From the NCBI GenBank assembly GCA_977030845.1, contig OZ365111.1:27466001-27530000 (forward strand): a stretch of DNA of 64,000 nucleotides, read 5' to 3'. The translations under genes and the position numbers were made by a program. This DNA is from Fimbriosthenelais zetlandica (lineage: Eukaryota). Below, in pieces: positions 6,667 through 39,600 of this stretch; position 1 is the first letter of the stretch, and every line of letters starts with the position of its first letter. The notes below the pieces were generated by a model, which was not told the origin of the DNA, ran no database searches, and saw nothing but the letters and a program-made list of their open reading frames with translations.

Positions 6667-9600
6667 GTCAGTACTAAATCATTAATTATAATCGATTTGT
6701 AGTTTGTGTGACAAGCATGGTTCCTCAGATGGTCACCCACAGAAAGCCTTGTAGTCTAGAGAAGGGGAAGGAAGCATGGAAAGTGAAAGTATTCTGCCGT
6801 CCAAAGCTAAAACGCAGTATGTATCTATACATAATAGTATAGTATACTGCGTTTTAGCTTTGGACGGCAGTTAATTGATTGAAGATTGAACCTATCAGGG
6901 TAGTACACCATTGCCTTGTTCGACTGAAGAATTGGTGGTTTTGTGGTTTGGGGTTGTAGACCTGTTCTGACAAACGAAGAGTATTAATATGCCGATGACC
7001 AGAAATCCAGTCCACACTTTGTCAAGTTCAGTACATAGTCATATTACTTCAGCCATATTTAGACTATATTATTGACTATATTATTTCCACTGCAGTGCGA
7101 GGAATGTGCACCTCTGTACAACAATAAACCGTTTCGAGCCAGTGACCAGCTAAACGCCTACGACTGCCAAGCCTGTGAGTGCTACAACCATGCCGACTCC
7201 TGTGTCTATGACAGGACGCTGGATCCATTCCCCAGTCAACATGACCAGGGTGGAGGCGGCAGGTGTGTTAACTGCCAACATAACACCCAGGGCCCCAGGT
7301 GTGATGTCTGTGTAGACCTGTACTATAGACCACAAGGCAAGAGTCTGTATGCTGAAGATGTCTGTCAACTGTGTGACTGTCATGCACCAGGTGTCAAGGA
7401 TGAGGAACTCCTATGTGAAAAGGTAAGTTCGTCAACTTACATCGTAACTTCAAACTACCGGTGTACCCCGCATCCATGCCAAGGGCCGCGCGTCCATTCT
7501 AAGGGCCCCGCGTACATTCTAAGGACCGCGCGTCCAATCTCATGGCCGCGCGTCCATTCTAAGGGCCACGCGTCCAATCTAAGAGCCCCACGTCCAATCT
7601 AAGGGCCGCGCGTCCATTCTAAGAGCAGAGCGTCAAATCTAAGGGCCGCGTATCCAATCTAAGAGCCCCGCGTCAAATCTAAGAGCCCCGCGTCCATTCT
7701 TATGGCCCCGCGTCCATTCTTATGGCTCCGCGTCCATTCTAATGGCCCCGCGTCCATTCTTATGGCCCCGCGTCCATTCTTATGGCCCAGCGTCCATTCT
7801 AATGGCCCCTCGTCCATTCTAATGGCCCCGCGTCCAATCTAAAGGCTGCGCGTCCAATCTAAAGGCTGCACGTCCATTCTAAGGATCCAGCGTCCATTCT
7901 AAGGGCCTCGCGTCCATTCTAAGGGCCTCGCGACCATTCTAAAGGCCGCGCGTCCATTCTAAGAGCAGAGCGTCAAATCTAAGGGCCGCGCGTCAAATCT
8001 AAGAGCCCCGCGTCCATTCTTATGGCCCCGCGTCAAGTATCATGGCCCCGCGTCAAGTATCATGGCCGCGCGTCCATTCTAAGGATCCAGCGTCCAATCT
8101 AAGGGCCACGCGTCCAATCTAAGAGCCCCACGTCCAATCTAAGAGCCCCGCGTCCATTCTAAGAGCCCCGCGTCCAATCTAAGAGCCCCGCGTCCAATCT
8201 AAGAGCCCCGCGTCCATTCTTATGGCCCCGCATCCATTCTTATGGCTCCGCGTCCATTCTAATGGCCCCGCGTCCATTCTTATGGCCCCGCGTCCATTCT
8301 TATGGCCCAGCGTCCATTCTAATGGCCCCGCGTCCATTCTGATGGCCCCGCGTCCAATCTAAAGGCCGCGCGTCCATTCTAAAGGCCGCGCGTTCATTCT
8401 AAGGATCCAGCGTCCAATCTCAGGGTCCCGCATCCATTCTAAGGACCTCGCGACCATTCTAAAGGCCCCGCGTCAAATCTAAGGACCGCGTGTCCATTCT
8501 AAAGGCCGCGCGTCCATTGTAAGGATCCAGCGTCCAATCTCAGGGTCCCGCGTCCAGGCCGCGCGTCCATTCTAATTGCCGCGTCCGTTCTAAGGGCCGC
8601 GCGTCCATTCTAAGGGCCCCGCGTCCAATCTAAAGGCCCCGCGTCCATTCAAATGTTTGGGGTGCATTCCTGGGGGTGAACATGAATGTGGGGGGATTTG
8701 AAATCGTTACACACCTGTATGCATACAAGGGCCCCGCGTCCATTCTAAGGGCCGCACGTCCAATCCCAGGGCCGCACGTCCATTATACAGGCCCCGCGTA
8801 CATTCTAAAGGCTGCGCGTCCATTCTAAGGGCCGCGCGTACATTCTAAAGGCCGCACGTCCAATCCCAGGGTCGCGCGTCCATTATACGGGCCCCGCGTC
8901 CATTGTAAATGCCCCGCTTCCATTCTAAAGGCCGCGCGTCTATTCTAAAGGCCGCGCGTCCATTCTAAATGCCCGCGTCCATTCTAAGGGCCCCGCGTCC
9001 AATCTAAAAGCCGCGCGTCCATTCTAAAGGCCCCGCGTCCATTCAAATTTTTGTGGCGCATTCCTGGGCGTGAAGATGAATGTGGGGGAATTTGAAATCG
9101 TTACACCTGTATGCATACAATTTTATGTGACTTGTATCAATGTGTCAATGCTTATAATGTACAGACACAGGCCCTGATCAGCTGTAGATAAAACACTTAA
9201 TCTCTTTAAGGGCTCTCTTAAAGCTCTTTCTTTAATAAAGGTTTTGCCAGAAAATAGTCATAGAGCCAGTTATCTCTTCCTACTCGCAATAAATGGCCTT
9301 GGTCGTTGCTGCGACTCTAACAAATGTAATCTACTTTCCAGGAGGGAGGCCAGTGTCAGTGTAAGCAGTTTGTGACTGGTCGTCAGTGTATGGAGTGTGT
9401 AGGAGGCTACTATAACATGCAGCTGACTAACCCTAATGGTTGTGAGGCGTGTGGGTGTGACACGGCTGGTACGATAGCTGCTGATATCACCTGCCATGCT
9501 TCAACTGGTCAGTGTAACTGTAAAACGGCCGTCACAGGTACGTGCAATATCTTTTGTCTTATGTCTTGGCCAAAAGTTTGTGGATCACCAGGAAATGTAG

Positions 9601-12600
9601 CTGCAGTTTTCAAGCAAATGGCAGGAGTTTGTTTGAAAATCGCTAGCCATTTCTGGTCAATTGATGTCTGGTGAAATTTCACTAATTTACTTCATCAGCG
9701 AAAATGGCTGCTGAAGAAAACGGCGGTCATTTTGTCAGAACATCAGACAATTTAGCCTGTTGGCCTTCAACTTTTGGCGAATTCTGTCATTGTATACCAA
9801 ACTTCTCACGGCACTTCATGAACTTCTATAACTTAACTAATCCACTAACCATCAACTGTGTCTCTTGCTTTCAGGGCGTCAGTGTGACCGATGTAAGCCT
9901 GGCTTCTATAACCTCGCCTCTGACAATGAACAAGGCTGCCGGCCATGCGGCTGTAAGCCTGAAGGTGCTCTGAATGCCTTCTGTAACCCAACCACAGGCC
10001 AGTGTCAATGTAAGCCTAGCATGCTCGGCCGGGACTGCAGCTCATGCAGTGAGGGCTTCTGGGGCTTTGAGAGTGGGTGCAGCCCATGTGACTGTCACGT
10101 GGACGGCTCAGAACCAGGCACAACCTGCGATACAATCACCGGGCAATGTGTGTGCAAGCCAAACGTCCAGGGACAGAGATGTAACGAGTGTGTCGGTGGA
10201 CATTATGGTCTTGGGTTGTCTGCCGAGGAGGGATGTCTCCCCTGTGGTTGTAACCAAGCAGGAACATTGGAAGGTTTAGAAGTGTGTGATGTGTTAACAG
10301 GACAGTGTAACTGTAAAGCTAATGTAGAAGGTGAGAGATGTCAGCTGTGTAAGCCGGCTACCTATAATCTAAAGGTGGAGAACCCGGATGGGTGTGAAGC
10401 CTGTAGTTGTGATCTGACAGGGACAGTCGGCGGTGATTCGATGGATGTTGAGCAGCTGCTCTGTGATCAGACAACTGGGCAGTGTACGTGTCTGGCCAAC
10501 AGGATGGGCAGGACCTGTGATGATTGTCAACCAGGTAAGTTGTTCTTGCCATCTTAAACCCGTCTAGGTTGTTATTCTTGTAGTTGGACTGACTTAAAAT
10601 ATGTCAAGAAAATGGCTCAGTGGATTTGGGTCTTTAAGCTTTTACTCAGAAAAATCCAAGGACAGTTACTCAATTTATGCTAAAACGTTCTTAACAATAA
10701 ACTCACATAATAGGTTCATGCAACTCCTGGAAATACCTCGAAATCTAAAAGCTGTTTATAAGTGGAAATTCCTAAGATTTTTTGCCAAGATCCTAGTTAA
10801 TTGTCAGACTTTTGTGGCCCTAATTGGAATTTTAGTGAAGGAAACTGCAAAACTGTGTATCAAAAATCTAAATAAACCATTTGTTGCCAGGTTCATTTTT
10901 GAGTAAGGATCCTGGGGGAGGTTGCTTGCCGTGTCAGTGTGTGCCCGGTGGGTCTATACCCTTCACGTTCTGTGACAGTCAGTCAGGACAGTGTGTCTGT
11001 TACGGCGGTAACTCAGGTATCACTGGACGACGATGTAACATGTGTAAACCAGGATATTACAACTTTCGCTTCGATACCAGAAGGTAGGAACTTAAACACT
11101 TTATTTCATATCTGGTGTAACCATCAACTTCAAATAACATTAGGCCTTCATTTTCATGTATCCATGTGTTGAATCCAAATCAGATGAGAAGGAATGTGGC
11201 TTGGGAGGTGCGCGGGAAAGGGCAGGTTTTAGTTCCTGCTCAGAAACAGCTCACTTAAATAAAGAAGGAAGAATTTCAATGTTATAGTTTATGGTTTTGA
11301 AAATGGATATCTATACTTGTTGGCTCACTATTTCTGTAGCGTTCTTGTAATTTGTCTCATTTTGTGTGTAAAATCTGTCTTGAATATGTAAGTACATGTA
11401 TAATACGTGATTTCTCGTTACAGTTGTAGCCAGTGTGATTGTGATGTGTCCGGCAGTAGTAACACCACCTGTGATCCTAACACTGGTCAGTGTCAGTGTA
11501 AGACTCACACCATGGGTCAGCGATGTAATCTTTGTATAGCGGGTACCAGTAATCTAGACGAGGCTAATCCATTTGGCTGCAGTAAAGGTATGTATAATAC
11601 AATGCACACTTTGGTATGCTTTAGCTCACTGAATCGCCATCTCAGTAGAGAGGCTATCTCACTATGTTCTTAAAGTTCCTACTACTTCAATATTGTCTGA
11701 CCTCGAAATCAGGACCACAATCCCCACAGGGTTCCCACAAGTAATTAAATTGATGACACATACAACTGTGTTAACCTGGATCATGTTTTTAACACCACAA
11801 TTGCAAGAATACCTGCTAAAACGACCATATGATTATGTGACTATTGCCACGACCCAAAGCACCACAAAGACATGCCGAATGTGTTCCTGTGACAAATGAA
11901 CTGTTTTCCTAACGAATGTGAACTACTCTTTAATCAATGTTTTGGACTTTTTTCAGCGCCATCTCAGCAGCCTCCACCCGAGCATATCCCTCTGTCGCCG
12001 ACCGCCCTAATGCTGTTCTGGGATGAGCCGGATTATCCTAATGGTATCTTACTGAGCTATACCCTGTACAGGAACGGTACAGAGAGGACTGTACTGCAAC
12101 CGTCAGGTAGGCATTGTATGATCGACCTACAGACAGATAGGAATTGACTGAATTTGAGGACGACTTTCAAATTGAGATCAAATGTCATGCTGGCCCCCTC
12201 CCGATATTGATTGGTCATGTGTAAATTGCTATTCCCTAATATGGAGTGGTCCTTCCTTTTAAGTCGAACTGTGGTGTTTGCCAAATGATCTTATGAATTC
12301 CTGAACTAACAAATGCAATGGTAGAAATCAGCTTTCATCATTTTACTTGTAAAACTCAGTACATAGTTCAATATCTGTAAATTTCAGAATTACAGTTCAA
12401 TGACACTGGACTGCGCCCTTTCACTGTGTACGCCTACAAAATCCGCGCCAGCAACTCTCATGGATCAACTGAAAGCCGTGAGGTGACCTTCCGTACGCCT
12501 GCCGACCGACCTTCAGGTCAAATCCTGCTGCACGCCACCATCATCAACACCGACATAACCCTCCAGTGGAACCAGCCAGATGCTCTCAACGGCTTCATTG

Positions 12601-15600
12601 TGAATTACGAACTCTTCTCAGTTAATAATTATGACAATACTGAAGTGGGACATTATTCTGGGCGTTCTCTGAGTGCGTTGGTGGACACGTCGCGTCTCCG
12701 GCCGTATGCGTTGTACACGTTTAACGTAAGGGCTTGTACGTCAGGTGGATGTCTCCTCAGTGAGCCGTATACCGTACAGACCAACATGTCAGCTCCTGAA
12801 GAGCAGGGACCGCCGGTAGTGCTGGCCGTGTCAGAGAGTCAGTTTGATGTGAGCTGGCAGCCACCAGTAAAACCTAACGGTAAGTTGATGAAAGCTTCCT
12901 ATTATGACCACTAGGGGGACTTGTGACGTGTGTGGTCTCATTAGGAGGTGGTCCCCCTTTCTTTACTTCCAACCCCAAACTTCCCTATTGTTCAGTTCTG
13001 CCTTCTGACATTGAGACTTTGGATTTGCTAAACTAAGAATTCTGTCCACTTAGATGTACAATTTACATAAGTCTTTGGTACTTCACCAAGGCCTAATTTG
13101 GATGATCTCTTACTAACTGCCTCCTTGAATCAACCTGTTACCTACCTACCTATTACCTCTTAACTATTATGAGAAAACTTATAAGGAAGTACATCAGCAG
13201 CCGTCCTTACCTTCTTAAATCATTCCAACCTCTGAGGCCGTTTGTTGTAGGCCTATTGTCATACATCTCCTGAATAAATATAGATTATTTTTAAAACAAC
13301 TTTAATATATTTTTTATTATTTTCTCCCAGGAGTGATCATCTTCTATGAGTTGTACATCCGGGGCCTGCCTGATGAGTCAGGTAGACGTGATCCTATAGA
13401 GACCTTGATATTCCGCCCGGCTGGCAGCTACGATCCCTGGCCTAATAAACCCCCCGGTGAGAGCGTGCTACCCCCGCCCGCCACTAGCTTCCTGGTGGAG
13501 CGCCTCTCAGCTTATACACTGTATGAACTGAGGGTGGCATGTAAAAGTGTGGCAGGCCGGGCCACCAGTGTCTGGGTACAGGCACGCACACTGGCTGGAC
13601 GTAAGTATTCCTTATCCTTGTTTTATACTTGCTTATTTTATTATTAGTTTTTATTAGTTTTTCCATGGATTCTGTGAAATTTGGGGCCCTTGTCCCTCTT
13701 TCTGATTATCCCTAAGAGCTTGGTACTCAAATTTTTACTTGCGGTTGTGATGAGTTTAGGGCGAAGAAAACTCAATATATAAGCATGCCTTAGATAATTA
13801 TGTTCACCCAAATCTTTCATGGAAGATCGATAGGCAGTTTTTTGTGGCAAGAACTAATCAGTTCGGTCCATTGAATTGGCCCCAAAATGTCCTTTTTGGT
13901 GAGTAATCTTTAAGGATTTTTAAGCACTGTGTAAAAGTGAAGGAGTAACACCAAGTGTTTGTTTGCAGGACCGCTCTTTATGCCACCTCCCCGTCTTATT
14001 CCCGTCTCACCGTCTCAGCTCATGATTGAGATACAGACACCGACTGATTCTGAGATCCGCGGGGAGGTCACAAAATACAGAATTTACCATTACCTGAAAT
14101 CAAACCTCGCCGAGACGCCGTTTGCTCCAGAATACATGTGGACCGTAAGTTAACTTTAAATGATCCAAAACTGGACTATATTCAAAATGATACAAAATGT
14201 CTATGATACAATGATAGGCATAAGATGACCCCTGTGGTCTTGATGGGCCATGATGTCCTGTTAAAATGTTATTCACTGCCTTTACCTTGCAGGGGGATGG
14301 TTATGCAAAATGGGTTGTAAGTATTCAAATGCTTGTGGTGGACAATTTCTATCCTAAAATGGTTGATACTCACTTAAAAATTACTGCAAAAACACTTTCA
14401 TAAGGCTTCACTGAGTTTGTTATTAACTGACTAAGGAGTGCTGACTTTGTTCTGTGGCTTTGTTCTTAGATATAATGAATATAATAAATGAAACTTAACT
14501 TCATTTAACTCCAAAAAGCATACAATCACTCTTTTTCAAAGCTGGATGTCTATCTAAGTACTGGATGTAGTCACCTAGTTCCCCTATTCGAACACTTTTT
14601 CTGAAAAAAAATTCACGTTGGTCAAAAGTTTCGTCAATACACATTTAACTGATAGAAGTCTTGCGAATATGTCCATTTTAAGGTTGATCAAATTTATTTC
14701 AAATAAAGTGGTTTCTTAACAAGTACTGGTTTAATATCTTTTGTAGTAATCACTTTACATACTAATTACATAGATAAAAATGTCATAACAAGATTTGTAT
14801 ATGACTAATTCTTTCTATATCTTTAATTTAACCCGATATTCTATTTTTTCCTCAGCATACAAGAAGGGCCCTGCAGTCAGATATTTAATATATCTTGAAT
14901 CTTGAAATGAACCAAATTTTAAAATCTGTCTCTTCCAGTTGTTGGTGGAGCTGGCACCAGCAGAGAGCCGGTACACGGCTGGAGGGTTCACGCCGTACAT
15001 GAATCAGACGTTTAGAGTAGAGGCCTGTAATGAGATCGGCTGTATTAACAGTACAGATGTTACAGAGGCTACTGATATAGGAGGTAAGTCTTCTACTGTC
15101 TCATTTCTNNNNNNNNNNNNNNNNNNNNNNNNNNNNNNNNNNNNNNNNNNNNNNNNNNNNNNNNNNNNNNNNNNNNNNNNNNNNNNNNNNNNNNNNNNNN
15201 NNNNNNNNNNNNNNNNNNNNNNNNNNNNNNNNNNNNNNNNNNNNNGCCTTTCTCTCATGTTCCTCCAATCTCTCTCTCACTTAGGTCTCTTAAAGTCTCG
15301 CTTAAATTGCTCTTTGGATGTCTCTCCTTTTCCCTCCCATCTCTGCCTTTCTCTTAAGTCTCTTGAACTGTCTCTCTCGCTCTCTGGATGTCTGTCTTTT
15401 ACTCTCTTACTCTCTTTTACTCTCTTGCTCGTTTTCTCACTTGATGACAATCATGCACCTTCTTTCTATGGCTGAACCATAACCTTCACTATTGTCTCTC
15501 CCAGCCCTCTTTCTCTCTCAATATTCCGAGCAACCAATCCTCCCTTACCTTTCTTCATTCGTACCAAATCCAATTATATGTCTAATGCATTTGTTAATTT

Positions 15601-18600
15601 AAAAGGTATTTTAAATTTACAGCACCAGCTGATGTGCCAGTACCGGCACTGAGGGCAGTGAACGGGTCGACTATCTCCATCTCGTGGAGTCCGCCTGGAG
15701 ATCTGAACGGTCCGAGTCCGTCCTACATTTTACGGCGTACCAACACAGCCTTTAACAACCCCCCGCCCCAGGTGTCCGCCGGCGTACGGTTCCCTGGTCA
15801 TTCCTACTATATGTTCGACCCTGATACAATACCACAGGGCGTAGGCTTCACAGGTAAGTCACGGATAGTGTTAAAGCGGCTCTATCACTCTATCTACATA
15901 ACTTGGTAACTATAAGAAATCTGCAGAGATCCACTGCTGTGATTTCTAGCAGTTTCATGCTGTTTTCAGCCAATGCCCAGTCAGGGACATAGGTCATACA
16001 ACTTGAATCTAGGTCAACCTGAAATAGATAGACCTGTACATGGAAAGTTAAGGCTCAATGCAGATAGGTGACAGTGCCACTTTAATGTATTTATTACATA
16101 AAGACTAGGGCTCAAGAGATATGGTGTTGAATTTGGGAACTCCTGGGTTGCATTGCATGGTCGCGGCAACAACCAAGGCAATATATTGCCTTGGTTTTTG
16201 CCTTGGTTGTTGCCGCGACTATGGCCGTAATTGGTAGATTAATGAATAAGTCAAGGTTTATTTTAAAATTGAATATATTACCGATGTTACAGGTATCCAG
16301 CTGTGGTTTAAGACGACCACCAGGGATGGTCTACTCATGTACTCGGCGTCAGAAGGTCAGGTAGAGTTTATAGCTCTACAGCTGCGCTCAGGACGGCCCT
16401 GGTTCCTCTTCGACCCTCAAGGTAAGGTGATATTATTCACACAGTGCCTCCAACAGTCATTTCGACCATTCCCTGAATATCTAGACATGTATTTGAAAAT
16501 AAAGAGTAATTTTTTATCAGCTGTCTTTACTTTTAGTAGGCATTAGAATTGAGCATAAAAATAATTATTTAAAAAAACCCAAAAACGAAATGATTTTGTT
16601 AATACTTTTTATCATACTAAGTTGTTCCAATGTTCCAAATTAATCTTTGGGAAGTGGACTACTGTCATACAGATTTCTATACATGTCTATTGTTAGAAGA
16701 TTCCGTATAATGTTTCTTGTATAATTACAAATATAGGATGATATTCTTGACCACTGCTCCTCCTAAAAATGAAATTTCTCATTTCAAGAAGTATTTGAAG
16801 TCTGTAAAGAGTATAAGTTACTAAGGACCTATTTAGACTTAAGACACATTTTGGCACAGACTGCACGAATTGTCTAAATACTTGTTTTTTAATTGTCACA
16901 AATAGCATGATTGTTAATGCATGAATTTCTACACAGTTAGAAAAAACAATTGAGTTTCCAATAATTAAAATGAAACATCTAAATAAATAACATCTAACAA
17001 TACTTTTTTCTGCACTATTTATGTTCATATCTCATTGATATTTCAACATTGGTACCATCCATATAGTAAGTAACGGCCTCTAGGTCGATGGGAGGTTGTC
17101 CTGCTGATTATCACTAAATCCTATAATCTTATTACAAAACATTACAGCTAGGGTGATGGTGGGCGCTGTCCTCTCAATGGCCAAATGGTATTACATACTA
17201 TATGCATGGTCCACCTCTAAAGGCAATACCATACTTCTGTCATCTCAATTGCAACACTACTAGCTGTTCCAAAGGTGATGCTTATCACAATAAAATGTAT
17301 AAATTGTGACCGAAGTATCCGAGCCTTTAAGGCTGGTGTCAAGGCTTTAAGGCCATCCTCCGCTGGTTCATTATGGTGCATTTATCATTGCGATGCTGGC
17401 ATCACATTTGTCGCAGTAGTATTGCAAGTAAAATGGCAGCAGTGGAGTACTGCCCTTAACCATTGAATGTTCTTTTCTGCATGGTGTGTGCTGCATGTAG
17501 GTTGCCCCACGGCCGTCGACACTTCCAACACGGATCGCACTTATAACGATAACAAGTGGCACCACGTGTATGTCCGCCGCTGGGCCACGTACGCCGAAAT
17601 CACTGTGGACTTCACACAAAAAGGTACTCACAAAATTCACACATCTTTGTTCCCATAGAGGAGAGAAAGGTCCTGATCAATTTTGGTTAATTTCCATGCA
17701 TATTCAATACCTTCACAAGAGCATTCCAGTTGTTTTAACTCGGCTTGAATGTTCTGGGATTTAGCGCAGTTGGTTAGCTCAAGGGGCTCGTCCAAGGGGT
17801 GGGTTGGCGGTTCAATCGTCGAACTGTCCAAAGTTCATACCCCCACTTTCCAATTGGGATGATGTTGTATAATAGTACTAACTTATAGATGCATAATTTA
17901 TATAAGGTCTCGATCAAATGTACCTGGAAGATGTCTTATGAAGTCATATCTGCATGGAACTTGACTATGATTGGGTCAGAACAAGCTGCCAGTACCAAAG
18001 CTTGAAACATTGGGTGTTCTCCACCAGTCTTACTAAGGTTACAGTACTATTGAAGTCAATAAAAATGTTAGAAAGCCCTAAAATATGTATAGAAGTCAAT
18101 ACAAACACCTTATGCTTCATTTCTTTGGCACTGGACATGTTTCTTGATGTTTTGGGATGAGTTTGTCTATCAGTTAAGGATGGAATCACCTGCACACACA
18201 TTTTCAGACAAAAAGGTACGTTTTATTTTCATTAACAGCACCACTATTACACATCAAACATGTTTTAGTGTGAAAAATCCATGTGCACCAAATCAGGAAC
18301 AAAGAGTGACGCACACTTATTGCACATATTTGGGTCCTTAGCAAATCATCGAGGTTCAGTGGTCAACAGAAAACCATGTCATTGAGAAGATTTTCCTGTT
18401 AAATTCAACTTGAAAACGCCTTTACTCTTCCTTTTGTTAATCGAAGACAGTTCTTCTTTAAAAACTAATATAACTTTCACACTCATTCCCCCTTTCAATT
18501 TTGTCTACTGCCCTCTTTTTGCTTTCTAATAATTCCTATGCACCATTCATTTTCCTCTTTATTACCCCTTACCCCTTACTAAACCCTTGCTTAAATGTAT

Positions 18601-21600
18601 TGACCTGCGTCTTTTACATCAAAGTTCTCCATAATCCTGAGGGATATATTCTTGGACATAAGTAGAAACAAGGAAAGCCCTCGATACATTATAAAACCCA
18701 ACTGACTTCCGATTAAAATTTTGAATCTGTTGTGATTCTCCTTGCCTCTGATGACAGCAGACTATTGGATTTGCCCTCAATAGCTCCAATACAGTAGCTC
18801 CCCACTTGAGGCAAGATTCAAGCTTGATTTTTTTCTTTTTAAAAAGAAAATTTCCATCCCTTATATATAAAGGAATAGAACAGATTGTTTAAAAGATTCA
18901 AGCATTGATTCCGGAGTAACTGGGTCTTACAATGTATAGCGGCCTAACCTGCCTGCCTTGCCTATAACCTGCCTGCCTTGCCAATAACCTTGCTTGCTGC
19001 TGAATCCATGTTAGGTTGTACCGTTGTGGTCACCAGTACTGACGATGTGGGTGTGAATTACGCAGACAATGAATGGCATCATATGAAAGCCGTCCGAGCG
19101 GGCAAAATAGGCCTCATAATCATAGATAACATATACACAGGTAGTATTAAAGACATAGGTTACATCAAACCATGAAGGTCAGACGCTTATTTTCAACATT
19201 TTTCAGTTCGAAATTCTATTTGGGATGTCCATTTCATCGTTGATTTATTCCTACGAAAATAACCTTTGACCTTCATCGGACACAACATAATTATAATCTC
19301 AAGGTCACTTAAGGCTTAAGGTCATGCCCCACTACGTTTCACACTGGTCCACGATCGCTGGTGGTTAAGGACTTCTTCTTCAGCAGCTGCAAAAGTACTC
19401 TGGTACAAAATCATTAGGCGCTGCAGATTCTTATCGGTGTTGTACATACCAAATGCTTATGGTGATAGCGCTGTTTTCTGGTCCATCGCATGGTCTCTCT
19501 CTCACAAGTCTCTTTTGGAAATACTGATTATACAGTATTCTGTGACAGCTAGGGTTCCTTTCCAAAATATATTCTATTCATTTTAGGATCATCAAGCAGC
19601 ACTTTTGCAGATAGGTGATGATTGTTAGACTCCTACTTCATCTAGTTCAGTTGGCCTAACACTCATTGCAAATCTGTGAAAGTCTCGCTTTAAATATGAG
19701 TTATTCCAATGAAAAATGACTTGAAAATGAAAGTCAAATCTAATATTCCTTTTAGTTAGATCCTGAAGTGTATTACTATCTACCCAACCTTCCTCATCTA
19801 GTCTAAATCCATCACAATTTTATCATTTTCACCATTATTTCCATTCCACACTAAGTTCCATACAACTATCAAACATTTTCTCATTCCCACAACAATCCAC
19901 CCTCAAACACAGAACAAACAACCAAATTATCTCTTCGCACTTTACACACTTTTCAAACATAAATGAAACCAATATGGATGGGAAATCTTCGTCAATGCCA
20001 GGTTTATCCTGCCAGGTAACGCCCTAGGTGATCTATTAATTAATAACTGAACCCGAACTGGTGTAAAAATAGGTTGTACGACCATCGTCACCACCACTGA
20101 CGATGAAGGGTGGACCTATACGGATGGCGAATGGCACCATATCAAAGTCTTTCGAGATGAGAAAAAAGGAACAATTATAATAGATAACCGATTCACAGGT
20201 AATATAATTATATTATTGATTAAAGGCATGCCGGAACATACTGCAAGGGCAATACGCTCACACAGAACTCACCTATATAGAAAGTCAAATTACGCTGTTA
20301 GCTGCTGGGTGCTTTTAAACAGGCCTAGTAGAATTCCAGAGCAATTTTACTTTCACTTTTATCTCACATATATTATTAATATTAGACCTTTTCTGCAGTG
20401 TTTATACATCAATTGGTCCAAATGCGTACATGGGCAATTGCTGGGCCAAGGATGTATTTGTATTGCATTTGTATCATTGTATTATTTATGTATACGTATC
20501 TCCTTGTCCTCATTGGATCTGGGGATATTGACAAATGTGTACATGGAAATTGTTAATAACTGAAGCATCTTTTCAAGGAAAAAATAGGTCAGGATTCTTA
20601 TTTTAAAGGCCTAGGTATAACTCACAATTCTGCAATCGCAGTAGTATAGGGCCATCTATACATACGTACACTGAAGGGTTTACTGACTTATAGGAGATCT
20701 TCTGTATGTAACCTACCATTAATTTTATTCTATTCATCAGCTTTAGTAACTCATTGATGTAACATTTCAGGGACCAATATAAGAGGCGGTGAGCTCTCAA
20801 TACAAACTAATTAAGACCCCTATACCTGTCCACACTACTGTCCAATGTAACCCGATATAATTATTGTCTTTCTGTATTATATTAAAATCAAGATTTAGCA
20901 TGTACATATCCCACAGAAATCGTTATAACTTCAGCTACATTCCCATGTGCTAGAAATAATAAAATTGTAGAATAACTTGGGAAATGATGCCCAAGATGCA
21001 TGGATGGAAGTCTACATGGTATTTGATATTGTGAGGGGTATATCTACGTAGTAATGATGTATGAGTGAAGCATGATTATAGAAATTAGGATCCACAAAGT
21101 AGATTATCCTCTGCAGAACCATTGGTTTATTTTAATAAAATTCGGTCATCCCTCACTATAGTATGGCCGTTGGAAATCCTTGGATTTTGAAATAATTTAC
21201 TACCAAGTCTTGTTTCTTTTTTGGCTTTTATTTACCATACCATCACTGATATTTTTCCAAATGTTTTCATTCAATTTATAAAAAGATATTTGAGGACAAT
21301 TCTACATTGTGGACCCTAAACCTAGACATGAAGTGAATAAAATTAAGGCATGATATATTTAAGTCTAAACTTAGAGTAAATCATTTACTCTAAGTTCTAA
21401 CACGGTAGTGTTGATTTTAAGTATGATACAACAGCACAGCGTGCCCAGTATTTGGTGACGGTTTTTTTTCTATAATTATATACAAAAGCAAGAGAATATT
21501 CTTTGAAAGACAACGACCTTCTGACATATAGTAGTATTGACACAGCTTCTCAGTAGCCTAATTTTGAACTTAGAATATTTGATATTATATGGTAGACATT

Positions 21601-24600
21601 TGGAATAAATATGCAATGAATTCTGAGGACTTAATACGAATGATTTCATTATTTTTTAGGCTCGAAAGAAGCAGGGAGCTGTGCTACTGGTAATATTATA
21701 GGCAGCAATACGGGACTGTATGTTGGGGGTCTCCCCAAAAATTATATTATACAACGAGATGAGGTGGACTCACGGGCTGAGGTTCGTTCACTTTTGTTCT
21801 CACTTTTCTTCATTTCTCATTACAAAGTTCTAAAGAATGAATAAAATATTGTATTTAATATTTTATATTCAGCTTCAACCCGACTTCATTGGATGCATTC
21901 GGGATGTTCAAGTATTGCGGCAGCAATCGCCCACAGAAGAATGGCTGGATGTTGAGTGGGAGGAGGCAAACGAACGCAACCATGCTCCGCCATCTTGGGA
22001 AGGATGCCCGACCAACCTGCAAGACGGTGCACACTTTCTGGGCACTGGTTGGTTTCCAATTCCTTGGATTTCCTTTCTGAATTAAACAAATATACTGTTT
22101 TTGTGAATCTGGCTCGTTATGTGTTCGATCATTTTTAGCGAAGTCAATCACTGATTGCTCAACCAGTGGTGTAGTGGTTAGAAAGTCTGTTGAAGGTCCC
22201 AGGTTCGAACCCGGGCCGGGTCAAACCAAAAACTTAAAAAATGGTATCTGGCGCTCAATAAACCAATTAATATATTTTTTCAGGTTTTCTGTCTTTCCGG
22301 GAAAACCGGTTCCAAGGCGGTAACAGTTTCGGTGTGAGCATGTTCTTCAAGACTGAGACTAGGAATGGTTTGTTGATGTTTGTACACGGTGGACCGAAGA
22401 ATTACTTCATGGTTCAGATGATAGATGGCAGTCTGACATTCTCCTACGGCTCTGTTCAAAACCGGGACACCTTAATCTACTCTGGCGGCAATATAGTCCT
22501 GTGTGACGGACGATGGCACTATTTCGAGTTTACAAAGGTAACATTGACAAATGCCTCCGAACTTCCACCCACCTCAGACCACCCCCAACATCATCATTTG
22601 AATCTCCTGATGTCGTTAAAATCCATAGTCTGAAATCCAGTGGTTTTAATATGGTCCCTGTATGGTTCTAATACTAAATTTTCTGAAGTACCATCCCTTA
22701 GGCGGTGATCCAGAGTCTGAATCCCCAGATGTTTCTGAACTTCCTGTACATATGGTTCTGATACTATACTACATGCTCTGAAATACCAACGACTGGGAGC
22801 TTGTCTATATTCTGAATCCCCGGGCGATTCTGCCCCATTGGAAATCAGTATAAAACACCAAACAGTGTATTAACATAGTTATGATTTCTTATATAGATGA
22901 GTTTTGTGCTGGCTGCCCAGGTGGATGACGGACCGAGGGTGACGTTAGGTACTGACAGGAGGAGTAACAATATCGTCTTTATCGCGTCTAAAGTCTACCT
23001 TGGTGGCATCGACCCTCAATCTACTGCTTTATCATTCATCAAGGATAATAACATAGACAATGTCCAGGACAGTGAGTATAGACATTAGTCATTCAGATTA
23101 ACCTATTGATTCACTAATCCAGGTGTTAGAGGAATCTAGTTAAGTTCTACATGTCTCCCATTGTCTGTGGTGAGAGGCATGTAAAAGGTCAGCCCTGTCT
23201 CCCACTGTCTGTGGTGAGAGACATGTAAAGACAAGCCATGTCTCCCACAGATTTTGATGAGAGGCATGTAAAGGCCAGCCATGTCTCCCACTGTCTGTGG
23301 TGAGAGGCATGTAAAAGGTCAGCCCTGTCTCCCACTGTCTGTGGTGAGAGACATGTAAAGACAAGCCATGTCTCCCACTGTCTGTGGTGAGAGGCATTTA
23401 AAGGCCAGCCATGTATGCCACTGTCTGTGGTGAGAGGCATATAAAGGCCAGCCATGCCTCCCAATGTTTATGTCAGGTCAATGTCTAATGAATAAATATT
23501 TACATATTTCATGAACTGAAAAACTCCTAAATAATGATCCAGAACTATATATTGGGATATAATTGGGTTAAAGACCTAATAATGTTAACATTTATCCAGG
23601 TTATGGAGGTTGTCTGAGGGAGGTGAGAATCCAGCGCGTGGAGTATAAATGGTTCCAGTCTGACAATGCTGTCAATGTCAAGGTTGACGGGTGTCCAGCT
23701 GACACTGAGACCTTACTACCATGTCAGGACTACCTCATGTCTGTACTCTATAACGGATCAGATACCAGCTACATAGACAACGACCTCCTCCCATTCACAG
23801 GTGAGAACACTTAAAGCTCCTCTATCACCTTTTTTAGCATATATATAAGCCTTCTCTTCAATCTCTATGTTTGCTTTACTGCACTTAATTTCGGCAGCAA
23901 CTAGATAAAACTGGAACTTTCAAAGGTTTCTCGGCCAATTTTCAACTTAGAATCTGAGTCAAACCGTATGAATCTAGGCCTCCAGCTGTAGACCCCTGGA
24001 AGGAATGTGCTGTTCAAAACAACCACTTTTTAAATGAATATTTTCAATTTTTAATGTTATTATTCTTTCAGATTATGTATACCAAATCGAAGCCTACAAC
24101 CCAGCTGGTGGAACCACAAGTGTGTGGAACTCTGGTAGAACAAGGGAAGCACGTAAGTCTTTCATTTGTGGTAGAATATAATAACTATTTTGTTTTATAA
24201 GCTTTATCAAAATATATAGGGAATAAAGATGACAAAAGTATTCTTTTTTTAATTACAGCTCCGTTTTCTGTGCCTGCCCTACTGTCTGCCTCTATCATTA
24301 ATGGCTACACCATTGCCGCTACATGGACCATCCCATTCGTGCGTACAGGAATGCTCAGTGAGCTCCAGATAGTCGCTATTAGTGAAACAAAACCATCTGA
24401 TCCCCATGTAATAGCCAGCTTTATAAACGAGACTGTGACGTCTGGAGCCATCACTAACGCTGTACCTAATACTAACTATAGCGTACATTTCGGGGCGTGT
24501 ACGTGGGGTGGATGTACCATCAGCACGGAGGGCATCAAACTTACCACCCCTGAAGAACGTGAGTGTTTTCTATTCATCATTTAATTTGCAAGTTTGTTCT

Positions 24601-36600: not shown

Positions 36601-39600
36601 GTGGTGGCATTGTATAATCACATTAGCCTTGCTTTTCGAGAATCCGAGAATCCTTTATTGAAAAATTCAGAGAGATGCAGTAAAACCTACACACAATATT
36701 ACATCTGAGCTTATTTAATATGCGTTATCTTGTTGTAGGTATGTGGAGATACAGGACGGGTCTATCTGCTGCCCGGACCCGGACCAGGACCGTGTGGCTG
36801 TAGGTGTGGGGAACCGCTGCTGTGAAGCTCTACCATACCGCTCATCAGGCTCACAACTCTGCTGTAATGGTGAGGATTACTCTATTATTATATTCATACA
36901 CGACCAATATTCATCATGTAAGAGCAAAATATTGAGGGTTAATTATTTTGGCATGGCCTTGGACATTCCTGTGGCCAGTGCCCCATATTTATGGACTTGG
37001 ACATTGCTGTGGCCCCTCCACCCTATGGGCCTGACCAGTACCCCACTTCTGATCTTGGACATTGCTGTGACTAGTGTCCCCTTTTTGGTCTTGGACATTG
37101 CTGTGGCCAGTGCCCTCCTTCTGGCCTTGGTAATTGCTGTAGCCAGTGCCCTCCTTCTGGCCTTGGTCATTGCTGTGACTAGTGTCCCCTTTTTGGTCTT
37201 GGACATTGCTGTGGCCAGTGCCCTCCTTCTGGCCTTGGTCATTGCTGTGTTCAGTGCCCTCCTTCTGGCCTTGGTCATTGCTGTAGCCAGTGCCCTCCTT
37301 CTGGCCTTGGTCATTGCTGTAGCCAGTGCCCTCCTTCTGGTCTTGGATAGTGCTGTGTAGAGTGCCCTTCTTCTGGTCTTGGACAGTGCTCTGGCAAGTG
37401 CCTCATTCTAAGCTTAGACGTTGCTGTGGCCAGTGCCTCATTCTGGTATTGGACATTTCTGTGGCCAGTGCCCTCCTTCTGGTCTTGGTCATTGCTGTCA
37501 TTCGCCTCTATCTTTCTGGAAAATGGATGTGAACCCTTGAAATTTATGTCACATTTGCGATAAAAAAAAACTAAGTATCCCCCTTTCTTGTCTGCAGGTA
37601 AGCTGCATGATAAGTACGAGTCACAGTGCTGTGGAGGTGAGGTGGTGGCTAACTCTCTCATCTGTTGTGGTAACACCACCCACGGTCAGGCCTACGATCC
37701 GGACGTCAGCCTCTACTGCTGCGGTGACGAGTATGTCAGCCGAGAAACAACCGTCTGCTGCACCAACGAGATCGGCCAGTCAAAGGTGAGTGCTTACCTA
37801 ATCCATTCATTGGTTTTAGAGTATCCTGCAGATTGATTTATTGATATAGTGTTGACTGATATACTTTTTGGGCGAAGCTCAGGGATAATATCGACGTAAT
37901 GATACTCAAGCTAGAGCGTTCCTTATGCCCATTTATTGAATGAATAAATCAATGAATTAATCAATGGTGGTTTTATGTCTTTCTAGCTATTAAGGCTATC
38001 TTTAATGCATGGTATTAAGAGCATTCCTTTTTCGTCTTTAATACTATCCTAATGTGATTGATGTGTTACAGGTACATAGTTTCGCCAGTGTGGCCGCCCT
38101 GGCAGCGTCTAACACTAAATGTTGCGGTACTGAGAGGATCTCTGCTGGCCTCAGCTGCTGTAACGGTGTAGGCTTCTCATCATTCTCACAGACCTGCGCT
38201 GACGTCTCAGACGTCCTCAATGGTAGGTTAATTAATAATATAAACAATCATTGTGTCTTAAAGCGGCTCTATCACTGATTCTGTCCCTGTACAGAGAGTT
38301 TATCAGGGATAAGATCAAAGTGACTCTATCACTGATATTTTACTGGTTCAGAGTCACATTTTTAGTTCATTCCCAATGCAATTAAAGTGACTCAATCACT
38401 GATATTTCTTGGTCAAATTGCATGAATCTTGGTCCGACGAACCTAGGGATATTTAACCATTATTTAATCATCATCTTCAGGATGTGGTACGGGAGTGGTC
38501 TGCCCTGTCAGCCAATCAGCAACAGCCTTCTGTAATCGTTGTAATTTCCGTCGTCAAACGACCAAATGTGGCGCCACTGAGCCGCGCGCTGTAGTCAAAG
38601 AAACACCTCCCTCACTAGAGGGCCTATGCTGGACGGATCCTGTGAGAATCTACAGAGGCCAGCAACTGGCTTACTTAGGTCAGTCAATCTTGCTGTATTG
38701 TTTTAAAATGATTTTTTTTTGTCTCAAAATTCTACTTTTAAAATTGCGTTTACTTAGTTCCCAGTCAATGAACCAGAAAATTGTATACAAGTTTGTACTC
38801 TTTGCCTTGCAATACTTGTGAGTAAATAAATATTGCGAAATTCATTGCAGTTTTCTTTTCTGCAATGAAAAGTTGCAATGTACGTGGCTGCAATGTACAA
38901 GGCTGCAAATTTGCAATGAAAACTTACCAAATAAAGGCTGAATAAAACTTTTCATTATAATTCATTTAACCTCATTTGAATGGTGTTTATTTAAAACAAT
39001 ATTTTTAAAAATCTGTTACAGATGAGGATCTGTCACCATTCACGGAGTATGAGTACTCTATCCTGGCAGTGAATGGAGCTGGTAGTCAGACTAGCCCTGC
39101 TAACTCAGCCCTCACCTCACAATCTCCACCACAAGACCTCTCCCCACCTACAGCTACAGTACAGGCCAACCAGCTGGATACCATCTACCTCTCCTGGCAG
39201 GAGCCTGCCAAACCTAATGGTCAGTCTACCTACAGAGACCCCTCAGCTGGGGTGGCACTTTAAACCAAAAGTTGTGCTTTATTAGAACATTTCTCTCTTG
39301 ATATGAAATCAAGATTGTCTTCCAGAGTGTAGTTGTTATTAAGTTATCTGTTTAAACGTCTAACTAAAGTTGAAACTTATTTTAAAACTCAAGTTTAAAA
39401 ATTGTCGAGGATCGAGTGTTAACCAATGGACAAAAAGATATATGTTCTTTACAAATATTTTCTGGATTAAGGTTGACTCTAAATGACAAGTTTTTATGCT
39501 AATAGTTGAAGAGGGAAATTGCTACTTTATCAATATTGTGGTTGATTACTTTTATCATTAATTTGATACAGGGGAGATTATTCAGTACATATTATTCCGG

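What the first reader, a model, noticed from the sequence alone, without database searches (positions are those of the whole stretch)
17501..20198. Triplicated, probably mutually exclusive exon in laminin-G domain 1 of usherin
Seen: between constitutive exons 16293-16421 and 21660-21781 lie three intact paralogous exons (123, 126, 126 nt). All are phase 1-1, begin GT TG(C/T) (Gly-Cys), contain Y-x-D-x-[KE]-W-H-H and end before a GT donor. B vs C are 25/42 identical; A vs C about 15/42. All three acceptors lack a good polypyrimidine tract, unlike most constitutive exons here. Known: vertebrate USH2A has one such segment (recalled as GSPVEVTTTNDHGKQYSDGKWHEIIAIR...DGIYT), and alternative splicing in LamG/LNS domains tunes ligand binding in neurexin (SS4) and agrin (z insert). 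Inference: joining two copies would duplicate strands within one beta-sandwich, so they are likely used one at a time (Dscam-style), giving three usherin isoforms with different LamG1 surfaces. Copy A is basic/aromatic (YVRRWATY), C is charged (FRDEKK). The intervening introns (1391 and 932 nt) are too long for steric exclusion and double inclusion keeps the frame, so another mechanism such as competing RNA pairing would be needed. I am not aware of a described MXE cassette in usherin, but could not search the literature.
Basis: partly seen in the sequence, partly recalled or inferred. Interest (0 to 1): 0.9.

Follow-up and report, generated by a model that had tools for sequence, protein, structure and literature searches.

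The report
Ancient alternative-exon switch in usherin
An invertebrate (probably worm) version of the Usher-syndrome protein usherin carries three interchangeable copies of one coding piece in its first laminin-G domain. Two versions of this piece are kept side by side in the molluscs and the annelid examined, so the protein most likely comes in alternative forms with different binding surfaces.

Summary
Three intact paralogous exons lie between the two constant LamG1 exons: A 17501-17623, B 19015-19140 and C 20073-20198. All are phase 1-1 with AG/GT sites, and each matches the same Laminin_G_2 profile positions.

The gene is a lophotrochozoan usherin. Two exon classes are kept side by side, intact, in all seven other lophotrochozoan loci I fetched (six molluscs and the annelid Owenia):
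- Class alpha corresponds to exon A.
- Class beta corresponds to exons B and C and resembles the single deuterostome form.

The hemichordate Saccoglossus has one copy, fused to the upstream exon. Oyster (Saccostrea cucullata) RefSeq isoforms X1 and X2 differ only by alpha versus beta. An exon tree gives the alpha clade 95/96 support, and B-C dN/dS is about 0.16. AlphaFold gives a complete LamG fold with either exon.

Mutually exclusive use is therefore well supported by comparison, but I found no RNA data for this species.

Docking/selector RNA pairing was not found above shuffled controls. Steric, U12 and NMD mechanisms are excluded by the sequence. Instead, exon A's acceptor carries UGCAUGGUGUG followed by a second UGCAUG, matching the C. 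elegans egl-15 Rbfox/SUP-12 element.

The scan had not noted this cluster elsewhere, though it flags many other candidate exon pairs in this genome. This is a new member of a known kind.

The parts
16293..16421 (+). Constant LamG1 exon upstream of the cluster. It ends in phase 1 with ...FDPQ followed by the first base of the Gly codon.
   Evidence: Open frame and splice sites. Pfam Laminin_G_2 positions 1-35. Homologous in all usherins.
17478..17497 (+). UGCAUGGUGUGUGCUGCAUG, lying between the pyrimidine run and the AG of exon A. It is a candidate Rbfox plus SUP-12/RBM24-type repressor element.
   Evidence: The 11-mer TGCATGGTGTG occurs once in 64 kb (0.03 expected). It equals the first 11 nt of the egl-15 element UGCAUGGUGUGC (PMC5558909 and bioRxiv 10.1101/2024.07.12.603345). 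TGCATG occurs 6 times in the cluster introns against 1.2 expected from the gene's other introns.
17501..17623 (+). Variable exon A (123 nt), the alpha-class copy.
   Evidence: Falls in the alpha clade with mollusc and Owenia alpha exons, support 95/96.
18185..18219 (+). Possible relic of the 3' end of exon A plus its donor (AATCAC...TTCAGACAAAAAG|GTAC). It is not an intact exon.
   Evidence: 16/17 match to 17611-17627 (D12) and local alignment. In the matching phase the open stretch is only 18 codons.
19015..19140 (+). Variable exon B (126 nt), a beta-class copy.
   Evidence: Falls in the beta clade, support 89/83. dN/dS against C is about 0.16.
20073..20198 (+). Variable exon C (126 nt), a beta-class copy. 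It is closest to the Owenia beta exon (51% identity).
21660..21781 (+). Constant LamG1 exon downstream of the cluster. It starts in phase 1 and carries the Cys (SC.TG) that co-occurs with the Cys at position 2 of every variable exon.

Best explanation
This is a conserved cluster of alternative, homologous exons in the first laminin-G domain of a lophotrochozoan usherin. Each mRNA most likely takes one of A (alpha class), B or C (beta class).

The exon starts two residues after the position that aligns with a Ca2+-ligand backbone residue of neurexin LNS domains. It encodes one short strand, a 14-15-residue loop and about three core strands of the beta-sandwich. Swapping it gives three usherin ectodomains that differ in part of the LamG1 surface while the fold is kept.

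The alpha/beta split arose before molluscs and annelids diverged. The B/C split is later but also old.

The choice is probably made by tissue-specific RNA-binding proteins rather than by docking/selector RNA pairing. In this species an Rbfox-type site fused to a GU-rich site, plus a second Rbfox site, sits between the pyrimidine tract and the AG of exon A. Where those proteins are present this should block exon A and pass splicing on to B or C, as in C. elegans egl-15.

Shown:
- the exon anatomy;
- the homology of the copies;
- deep conservation of both classes;
- alternative RefSeq isoforms in an oyster;
- foldability of LamG1 with either exon;
- the presence of the motif.

Inferred:
- one-at-a-time use in this species;
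- the functional difference between isoforms;
- the regulator.

I put about 0.8 on substitution-type alternative use and about 0.35 on the Rbfox/SUP-12-type control of exon A.
For: - Anatomy and homology of the three exons.
- Alpha and beta exons are both intact, with AG/GT, phase 1-1 and lengths that are multiples of 3, in Saccostrea, Argopecten, Pinctada, Lottia, Biomphalaria, Plakobranchus and the annelid Owenia. Two of these exons are unannotated.
- Saccoglossus has a single copy with no intron before it.
- S. cucullata XP_062584554 and XP_062584555 differ only by alpha versus beta.
- Mizuhopecten XP_021347323 has alpha and OWF53397 has beta.
- Tree: alpha clade including exon A at 95/96; lophotrochozoan beta clade including B and C at 89/83.
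- B-C: pN 0.24, pS 0.68.
- AF2 models of oyster LamG1 with alpha (pLDDT 84.7) and with beta (83.5) are both complete LamG folds. Best PDB matches are pikachurin LG3, perlecan LG3, laminin alpha2 LG5, neurexin LNS2 and agrin.
- The profile alignment to neurexin places the exon start right after the FN-V-G loop.
- Motif. TGCATG is the top hexamer when enrichment in the window and Owenia clusters is combined.
- Literature on the egl-15 element.
Against: - No transcript evidence for this species was reachable.
- Double inclusion and complete skipping both keep the reading frame. Four gene models elsewhere contain alpha and beta in tandem (Saccostrea echinata RefSeq, Pecten maximus, a Biomphalaria GenBank model, an old Aplysia model). 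Co-inclusion is therefore not excluded by sequence alone.
- Nothing found explains why A and B, or B and C, would not be joined when no repressor is present.
- The three-copy state is seen only in this window.
- The composite Rbfox/GU element is absent from the seven other, distantly related loci, and the motif was noticed post hoc.
- Three of Owenia's ten TGCATG lie in one 61-nt tandem repeat.
Confidence: 0.75

Rival explanations
1. Choice among A, B and C is enforced by competing RNA secondary structures, with one docking site pairing with one of three selector sites as in Dscam1 exon 6 or 14-3-3 zeta. The exons are still mutually exclusive; only the mechanism differs.
For: The intervening introns are long (1391 and 932 nt) and double inclusion keeps the frame, so some active mechanism is needed. 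This mechanism is common in arthropod clusters (PMC6071210, listed).
Against: A scan asked whether any 10-16-nt window in the first or last cluster intron is complementary to a site in each of three introns. Values lay inside the dinucleotide-shuffle distribution, with 23-95% of shuffles reaching the observed value. The best pairwise helices between all intron pairs were also at the shuffle mean. An RNAduplex scan gave only G-rich windows of about -20 kcal/mol. No three-copy direct repeat family exists in the introns. Limits: only ungapped helices were scored, and no close relative was available for covariation.
Confidence: 0.1
2. Only one copy (or only A plus one beta copy) is really used. 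The remaining copy is a pseudo-exon that happens to stay open.
For: No RNA data are available for this species. The B/C duplication is not seen in the other loci. C has a poor pyrimidine tract. A decayed fragment of an exon-A copy at 18185-18219 shows that copies can die here.
Against: B and C differ at 68% of synonymous sites but only 24% of non-synonymous sites, and both keep the frame, AG/GT sites, the Cys and the Y-x-D-x-x-W-H and I-D motifs. Alpha and beta have both stayed intact since before the mollusc-annelid split. Each copy scores as LamG on its own.
Confidence: 0.08
3. Two or three copies are spliced together, giving an enlarged or repeated LamG1 rather than alternative isoforms.
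For: All exons are multiples of 3 in phase 1-1, so tandem inclusion stays in frame. Several gene models in other species, including one RefSeq model, contain alpha and beta in tandem.
Against: A single copy already completes the LamG sandwich (13 strands). Deuterostome usherins have one copy. Where two RefSeq isoforms exist, each has one exon. Newer RefSeq models of Aplysia and Biomphalaria dropped the second copy. A second copy would add an unpaired Cys and duplicate core strands. The Pecten model reads through intron sequence between the copies, which is a prediction artefact.
Confidence: 0.05
4. The copies are an assembly artefact or a very recent duplication.
For: None beyond the tandem arrangement.
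Against: Exon identity is 67% or lower at the DNA level (85/126 for B-C). The flanks cannot be aligned. The same arrangement occurs in independent assemblies of seven other species.
Confidence: 0.01

Closest known systems
FGFR2 exons IIIb/IIIc and C. elegans egl-15 exons 5B/5A
   Same: Tandem homologous exons replace part of an extracellular beta-sandwich domain and so change ligand specificity. Choice is made by tissue-specific RNA-binding proteins. In egl-15 the upstream exon is repressed through UGCAUGGUGUGC in its upstream intron flank, bound by ASD-1/FOX-1 and SUP-12 (PMC2777236, PMC5558909). Exon A here has UGCAUGGUGUG at -22..-12 and a second UGCAUG at -8.
   Different: The domain is different (LamG, not Ig) and so is the gene. 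There are three exons rather than two. Binding of any protein to the element is untested, and the element is not seen in the other species' loci.
Dscam1 exon 4/6/9, 14-3-3 zeta and Mhc clusters (docking/selector RNA pairing)
   Same: Arrays of tandemly duplicated exons of the same length and phase, used one at a time.
   Different: No docking/selector complementarity above chance. Only two or three variants. The cluster is conserved in Lophotrochozoa, not arthropods.
Neurexin SS2/SS3/SS4 and agrin y/z splice sites in LNS/LamG domains
   Same: Alternative splicing alters a LamG/LNS domain next to its Ca2+/ligand-binding rim. The LamG1 model here matches these structures, and the variable exon starts right after the loop aligned to a neurexin Ca2+-ligand position (the identity of that ligand is from my memory of the neurexin-1 beta literature).
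   Different: Those are short cassette inserts in loops. Here about 42 residues, including about three core strands, are exchanged for a homologous segment.
Vertebrate and other deuterostome usherin (USH2A)
   Same: Orthologous gene and domain order: laminin EGF repeats, FN3, two LamG, then a long FN3 array. The beta class resembles the single deuterostome segment (T-P-T-N-D-G-G..Y-D-D-G-x-W-H-H).
   Different: The deuterostome proteins examined have one copy. In Saccoglossus the segment is not even a separate exon. No mutually exclusive cassette in USH2A turned up in the literature searched.
Saccostrea cucullata usherin-like isoforms X1/X2 (RefSeq XP_062584554/XP_062584555)
   Same: Orthologous alpha/beta pair at the same position, annotated as two isoforms that differ only by this exon. 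The genomic exons are at L001 25400-25528 and 28070-28195.
   Different: Two copies, not three. This is a database annotation only; no publication was found.

Membership tests
Mutually exclusive exon cluster from tandem exon duplication | Adjacent exons of near-equal length and identical splice phase between two constant exons | tested here: met
   123/126/126 nt, all phase 1-1, all with AG/GT sites.
Mutually exclusive exon cluster from tandem exon duplication | The exons are homologous and encode the same part of the protein | tested here: met
   Pairwise E 1e-15 to 6e-4. All map to Laminin_G_2 positions about 43-74.
Mutually exclusive exon cluster from tandem exon duplication | All copies are kept by selection | tested here: met
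   Alpha and beta are intact in 7 of 7 other lophotrochozoan loci. B-C dN/dS is about 0.16 with saturated dS. Clade supports are 95/96 and 89/83.
Mutually exclusive exon cluster from tandem exon duplication | Mature transcripts contain exactly one copy | not testable with these tools
   No RNA data for this species. Indirect support: oyster RefSeq isoforms each carry one copy. Counter-examples are gene models with both copies.
Docking/selector (competing RNA structure) clusters | One intronic docking site is complementary to a selector site next to each variable exon | tested here: not met
   Triple-complementarity statistic lies within shuffles for k = 10-16 in both possible docking introns. 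Pairwise helices are at the shuffle mean. Only ungapped helices were scored and no covariation test was possible.
Mutual exclusion by steric hindrance, U2/U12 incompatibility or NMD | A very short intervening intron, mixed U12/U2 splice sites, or a frameshift on double inclusion | tested here: not met
   Introns are 1391 and 932 nt. Donors are GTACTC, GTAGTA, GTAATA and GTAAGG, none U12-type. All exon lengths are multiples of 3.
Rbfox (Fox-1) / SUP-12-regulated exon, egl-15 type | UGCAUG directly followed by GUGUG in the upstream intron flank of the repressed exon | tested here: met
   UGCAUGGUGUGUGCUGCAUG at 17478-17497, ending 4 nt before exon A. The 11-mer is unique in the window, with 0.03 expected. 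TGCATG is enriched in the cluster, 6 against 1.2.
Rbfox (Fox-1) / SUP-12-regulated exon, egl-15 type | The proteins bind the element, and exon choice depends on them | not testable with these tools
   Needs binding and knock-down or minigene experiments.
Usherin (USH2A) orthologue | Laminin-type EGF repeats, FN3, two LamG domains and a long FN3 array, with best hits being usherins | tested here: met
   Pfam hits along the window. The 1011-aa exon finds usherins of scallops, echinoderms and vertebrates at E = 0.

The most novel reading that the evidence does not exclude
Usherin may carry a splice code that is more than 500 million years old, comparable to neurexin SS4. Cell-type-specific RNA-binding proteins (Rbfox with an RBM24/38-type partner) would choose among alpha, beta and beta' versions of the LamG1 rim. 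That choice would set which extracellular partner the usherin of a given sensory or ciliated cell binds. Deuterostomes kept only the beta-like form.
Probability: 0.15. Interest if true: 0.7.

Novelty: new member of a known kind. Interest (0 to 1): 0.55.

Why it matters
Usherin is the most frequently mutated Usher-syndrome and retinitis pigmentosa protein, yet the ligands and roles of its two LamG domains are poorly known.

A switch confined to LamG1 has been kept in molluscs and annelids since before those phyla split. This points to that part of the domain as a functional, probably ligand-contacting, surface. It also supplies natural variants to test in binding assays.

The finding adds a deeply conserved case to the short list of exon-substitution events in extracellular adhesion proteins.

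Practically, it shows that several public gene models (Pecten, Saccostrea echinata, one Biomphalaria model and an old Aplysia model) wrongly join both copies, and that the Owenia and Lottia models miss one copy.

The near-identity of exon A's acceptor element to the structurally solved egl-15 Rbfox/SUP-12 site gives a directly testable regulatory hypothesis outside nematodes.

Tried and rejected
- Docking/selector search in two forms: RNAduplex windows, and an ungapped triple-complementarity statistic with dinucleotide shuffles. Pairwise intron helices were also scored. Nothing exceeded chance.
- Direct and inverted repeats in the cluster gave only short two-copy matches, apart from the exon-A 3' relic and a 20-nt tandem repeat before exon B.
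- ARAGORN on the cluster found no tRNA.
- The first homologous-protein search used a shark usherin and returned only vertebrates. It was useful only as an outgroup.
It had no record for Mya X2 or Patiria X1, so Mizuhopecten, Haliotis, Mya and an echinoderm could not be checked at the DNA level.
I removed that row and did not send it elsewhere.
- Model coordinates are not exposed, so solvent exposure of the variable residues and the distance between the two lophotrochozoan-specific cysteines could not be measured.
- Identifying the species by per-cent identity in the FN3/LamG region was uninformative because of off-diagonal FN3 hits.
- The composite Rbfox/GU element was looked for in the other loci and is absent.
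- Literature searches found no paper on an usherin exon-substitution event.


Full report
**Observation**

Between the constant exons 16293-16421 and 21660-21781 lie three exons: A 17501-17623 (123 nt), B 19015-19140 (126 nt) and C 20073-20198 (126 nt). Each has an AG acceptor, a GT donor and phase 1-1. Joined to the two constant exons, each gives one open reading frame.

Each exon alone matches Pfam Laminin_G_2 at profile positions about 43-74, and the upstream exon matches positions 1-35. The three therefore encode the same piece of one domain.

tblastn of the three peptides against the whole 64-kb window finds only these copies. B-C is 26/43 identical (E 1e-15), A-C 15/38 (E 9e-6) and A-B 13/38 (E 6e-4). 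The intron flanks do not align.

**What the gene is**

Pfam hits along the + strand give laminin-type EGF repeats (7072-10557), FN3 (12426-15909), LamG1, LamG2 (from 22334) and a long FN3 array that includes a 1011-codon exon (41102-44137).

That large exon finds usherins at E = 0. The named best hits are usherin-like proteins of a crinoid, lamprey, Ciona and amphioxus. The closest of all are scallop usherins, at about 47% over the large exon and 53-56% in LamG1.

Consistent with that, exon C's nearest relative is the beta exon of the annelid Owenia at 51%. I did not establish the species.

**The comparative result**

Lophotrochozoan usherin proteins show two classes of this segment.
- The alpha class has a longer, variable loop and motifs such as D-R-T-Y-N-D-N-x-W-H. 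Exon A belongs here.
- The beta class has T-x-T-N-D-E-G-x-x-Y-N-D-x-x-W-H. Exons B and C belong here. It resembles the single deuterostome form.

Three lines show that the two classes are alternatives at one position.
- In Saccostrea cucullata, RefSeq isoforms X1 and X2 are identical except that X1 has alpha and X2 has beta.
- In Mizuhopecten, the RefSeq model has alpha and the genome paper's model has beta.
- Models of Saccostrea echinata, Pecten maximus, one Biomphalaria annotation and an old Aplysia entry contain alpha followed by beta. The Pecten model reads through intron sequence between them, and newer RefSeq models of Aplysia and Biomphalaria contain beta only.

At the DNA level I fetched eight loci.
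- Saccostrea, Owenia, Biomphalaria, Argopecten, Lottia, Pinctada and Plakobranchus each have one alpha exon followed 0.8-2.5 kb later by one beta exon.
- All of these exons are open, have AG/GT sites, are in phase 1-1 and have lengths that are multiples of three.
- The Owenia beta and Lottia alpha exons are not in the annotated proteins.
- The hemichordate Saccoglossus has one copy, contiguous with the upstream exon and with no intron at this position.

A maximum-likelihood tree of 33 exon peptides gives three results.
- All 13 alpha exons, including A, fall in one clade (95/96).
- All 12 lophotrochozoan beta exons, including B and C, fall in another (89/83).
- Deuterostome forms lie outside both.

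With only 45 columns the inner branches are weak, and B and C are each other's nearest neighbours without being resolved as sisters.

B and C differ at 68% of synonymous but only 24% of non-synonymous sites (dN/dS about 0.16).

Together these results show three things.
- The alpha/beta duplication predates the mollusc-annelid split.
- Both classes have been kept under selection.
- The B/C duplication is also old.

**Structure**

AlphaFold2 was run on alignments of 44 usherin LamG1 segments, with the oyster alpha or beta isoform as the target.
- Both runs give complete LamG sandwiches (mean pLDDT 84.7 and 83.5; pTM 0.82 and 0.81) with the same strand order.
- The variable exon (model residues 86-129) covers a short strand (89-92), a 14-15-residue loop, strands at about 108-116 and 119-124, and the start of the next strand.
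- Foldseek places the model with pikachurin LG3, perlecan LG3, laminin alpha2 LG5, neurexin LNS2 and agrin LG domains.

In the profile alignment to neurexin-1, usherin F-D-P-Q aligns with F-N-V-G of LNS6. From my memory of the neurexin-1 beta structures, that Val carbonyl is a Ca2+ ligand. If so, the exon begins two residues after a rim position.

Every lophotrochozoan alpha and beta exon has a Cys at its second or third codon, and the downstream constant exon has a Cys in S-C-x-T-G. The deuterostome sequences in the alignment lack both. I infer a disulfide that each variant forms singly, but without coordinates I could not test it.

**How exclusivity and choice might work**

- Steric hindrance is excluded, because the introns are 1391 and 932 nt.
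- U2/U12 incompatibility is excluded, because all donors are GT-A/G type and none is GTATCC.
- NMD is excluded, because all exon lengths are multiples of three.

A docking/selector arrangement was tested by asking whether any 10-16-nt window of the first or last cluster intron is complementary to a site in each of three introns. Observed values lay within dinucleotide shuffles. The best helices between every intron pair were also at the shuffle mean. This is a limited test, with ungapped helices and no related genome for covariation. It gives no support to RNA pairing.

Looking at the splice-site flanks, I saw that exon A's acceptor reads ...ttcttttc UGCAUGGUGUGUGCUGCAUG uag|GU.
- TGCATG occurs 6 times on the sense strand in the 5.2-kb cluster.
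- About 1.2 are expected from the gene's other introns (P about 0.002) and about 1.7 from shuffles.
- Owenia's cluster has 10 against 2.2 expected. Three of these lie in a 61-nt tandem repeat that abuts the alpha acceptor.
- In an unbiased ranking of all hexamers, TGCATG is 16th of 2457 in the window and 4th of 2023 in Owenia. It is first when the two enrichments are combined.

The 11-mer TGCATGGTGTG is unique in the window, with 0.03 expected. It equals the first 11 nt of UGCAUGGUGUGC. That is the C. elegans egl-15 element, where an Rbfox protein (ASD-1/FOX-1) and SUP-12 bind side by side in the upstream flank. They repress the upstream exon of a mutually exclusive pair (PMC2777236, PMC5558909, bioRxiv 10.1101/2024.07.12.603345).

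The composite element is not present in the seven other loci, which are all very distant, and I found it post hoc. I therefore treat Rbfox/SUP-12-type repression of exon A as the best current lead (about 0.35), not as a finding. It would explain A versus B/C. It would not explain B versus C, nor why two copies are not joined.

**Other details**

- The claim that all three acceptors lack a pyrimidine tract is only partly true. By a rough homology-based exon model, the pyrimidine fraction at -23..-4 is 0.50, 0.60 and 0.35 for A, B and C, against a mean of 0.60 (sd 0.12) for 37 other exons. A has a 9-nt pyrimidine run just upstream of the Rbfox-like element.
- A fragment at 18185-18219 repeats the last 30 nt or so of exon A with its donor, but it is not an open exon.

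**Comparison with what is known, and novelty**

Tandem exon duplication with substitution-type splicing is a well-known kind of system.
- The closest functional parallels are FGFR2 IIIb/IIIc and egl-15 5B/5A, where half of an extracellular beta-sandwich is swapped under RNA-binding-protein control.
- Neurexin and agrin LamG splice sites affect the same fold but use loop inserts.
- Dscam-type clusters share the anatomy but not, as far as I can see, the RNA mechanism.

I found no paper describing this event in usherin. It exists implicitly in one oyster RefSeq annotation. The scan has flagged many other candidate exon pairs in this genome but not this one.

I rate it a new member of a known kind. 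The added points of interest are its age, its position in a disease-gene orthologue and the egl-15-like element.

**Verdict**

- Mutually exclusive use is well supported by comparison but not shown by RNA in this species (0.75-0.8).
- RNA pairing is not supported.
- Regulation by Rbfox-type proteins is a testable lead.

Noticed in passing
window 18945-18984: A 20-nt unit (TAACCTGCCTGCCTTGCC..) is repeated twice in tandem 31-70 nt upstream of exon B's acceptor. It is rich in UGCC/UGCU (YGCY-type) motifs and could be a regulatory element for exon B.
   Followed up: no
L002 23782-24062 (Owenia fusiformis): A 61-nt tandem repeat (4.5 copies, 87% matches) runs right up to the acceptor of the alpha exon. 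Three units carry UUGCAUG and two carry UUACAUG. Two more UGCAUG overlap 38-42 nt downstream of the beta exon.
   Followed up: partly
L002 25378-25503 and L005 12802-12930: The Owenia beta exon and the Lottia alpha exon are intact in the genome but absent from the deposited protein models. The Pecten maximus, Saccostrea echinata, Biomphalaria KAI8788726 and old Aplysia models join both copies.
   Followed up: yes
L006 17729-17950 (Saccoglossus kowalevskii): In the hemichordate, the segment homologous to the variable exon is contiguous with the upstream LamG1 exon. The phase-1 intron that frames the lophotrochozoan cassette is therefore absent there.
   Followed up: partly
proteins P0304/P0305, P0311/P0312, P0303/P0284 (Asterias, Acanthaster, Antedon): Echinoderm usherin RefSeq isoforms share two other alternative events. 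One is a 20-residue Cys-rich segment (GSFFDKTQGLCCQMTFV..-type) that is skipped in one isoform in both sea stars and the crinoid. The other is a 5-residue insert near the C-terminus in the two sea stars.
   Followed up: no
window 58654-61071 (- strand): An intronless 805-codon ORF with a PH domain lies downstream of the usherin gene on the opposite strand.
   Followed up: partly
window 36743-37360: Long ORFs on both strands are made of a repeated unit of about 15 codons (..LDIAVASALLLALVIAV..). This is probably an intronic minisatellite inside the usherin gene, not coding sequence.
   Followed up: no
window 17040-17230 and 17760-17830: A 20-nt inverted repeat (17054-17073 / 17191-17210, 90% complementary) and a GC-rich segment interrupt the AT-rich cluster introns. 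They may be transposon remnants. ARAGORN finds no tRNA there.
   Followed up: partly
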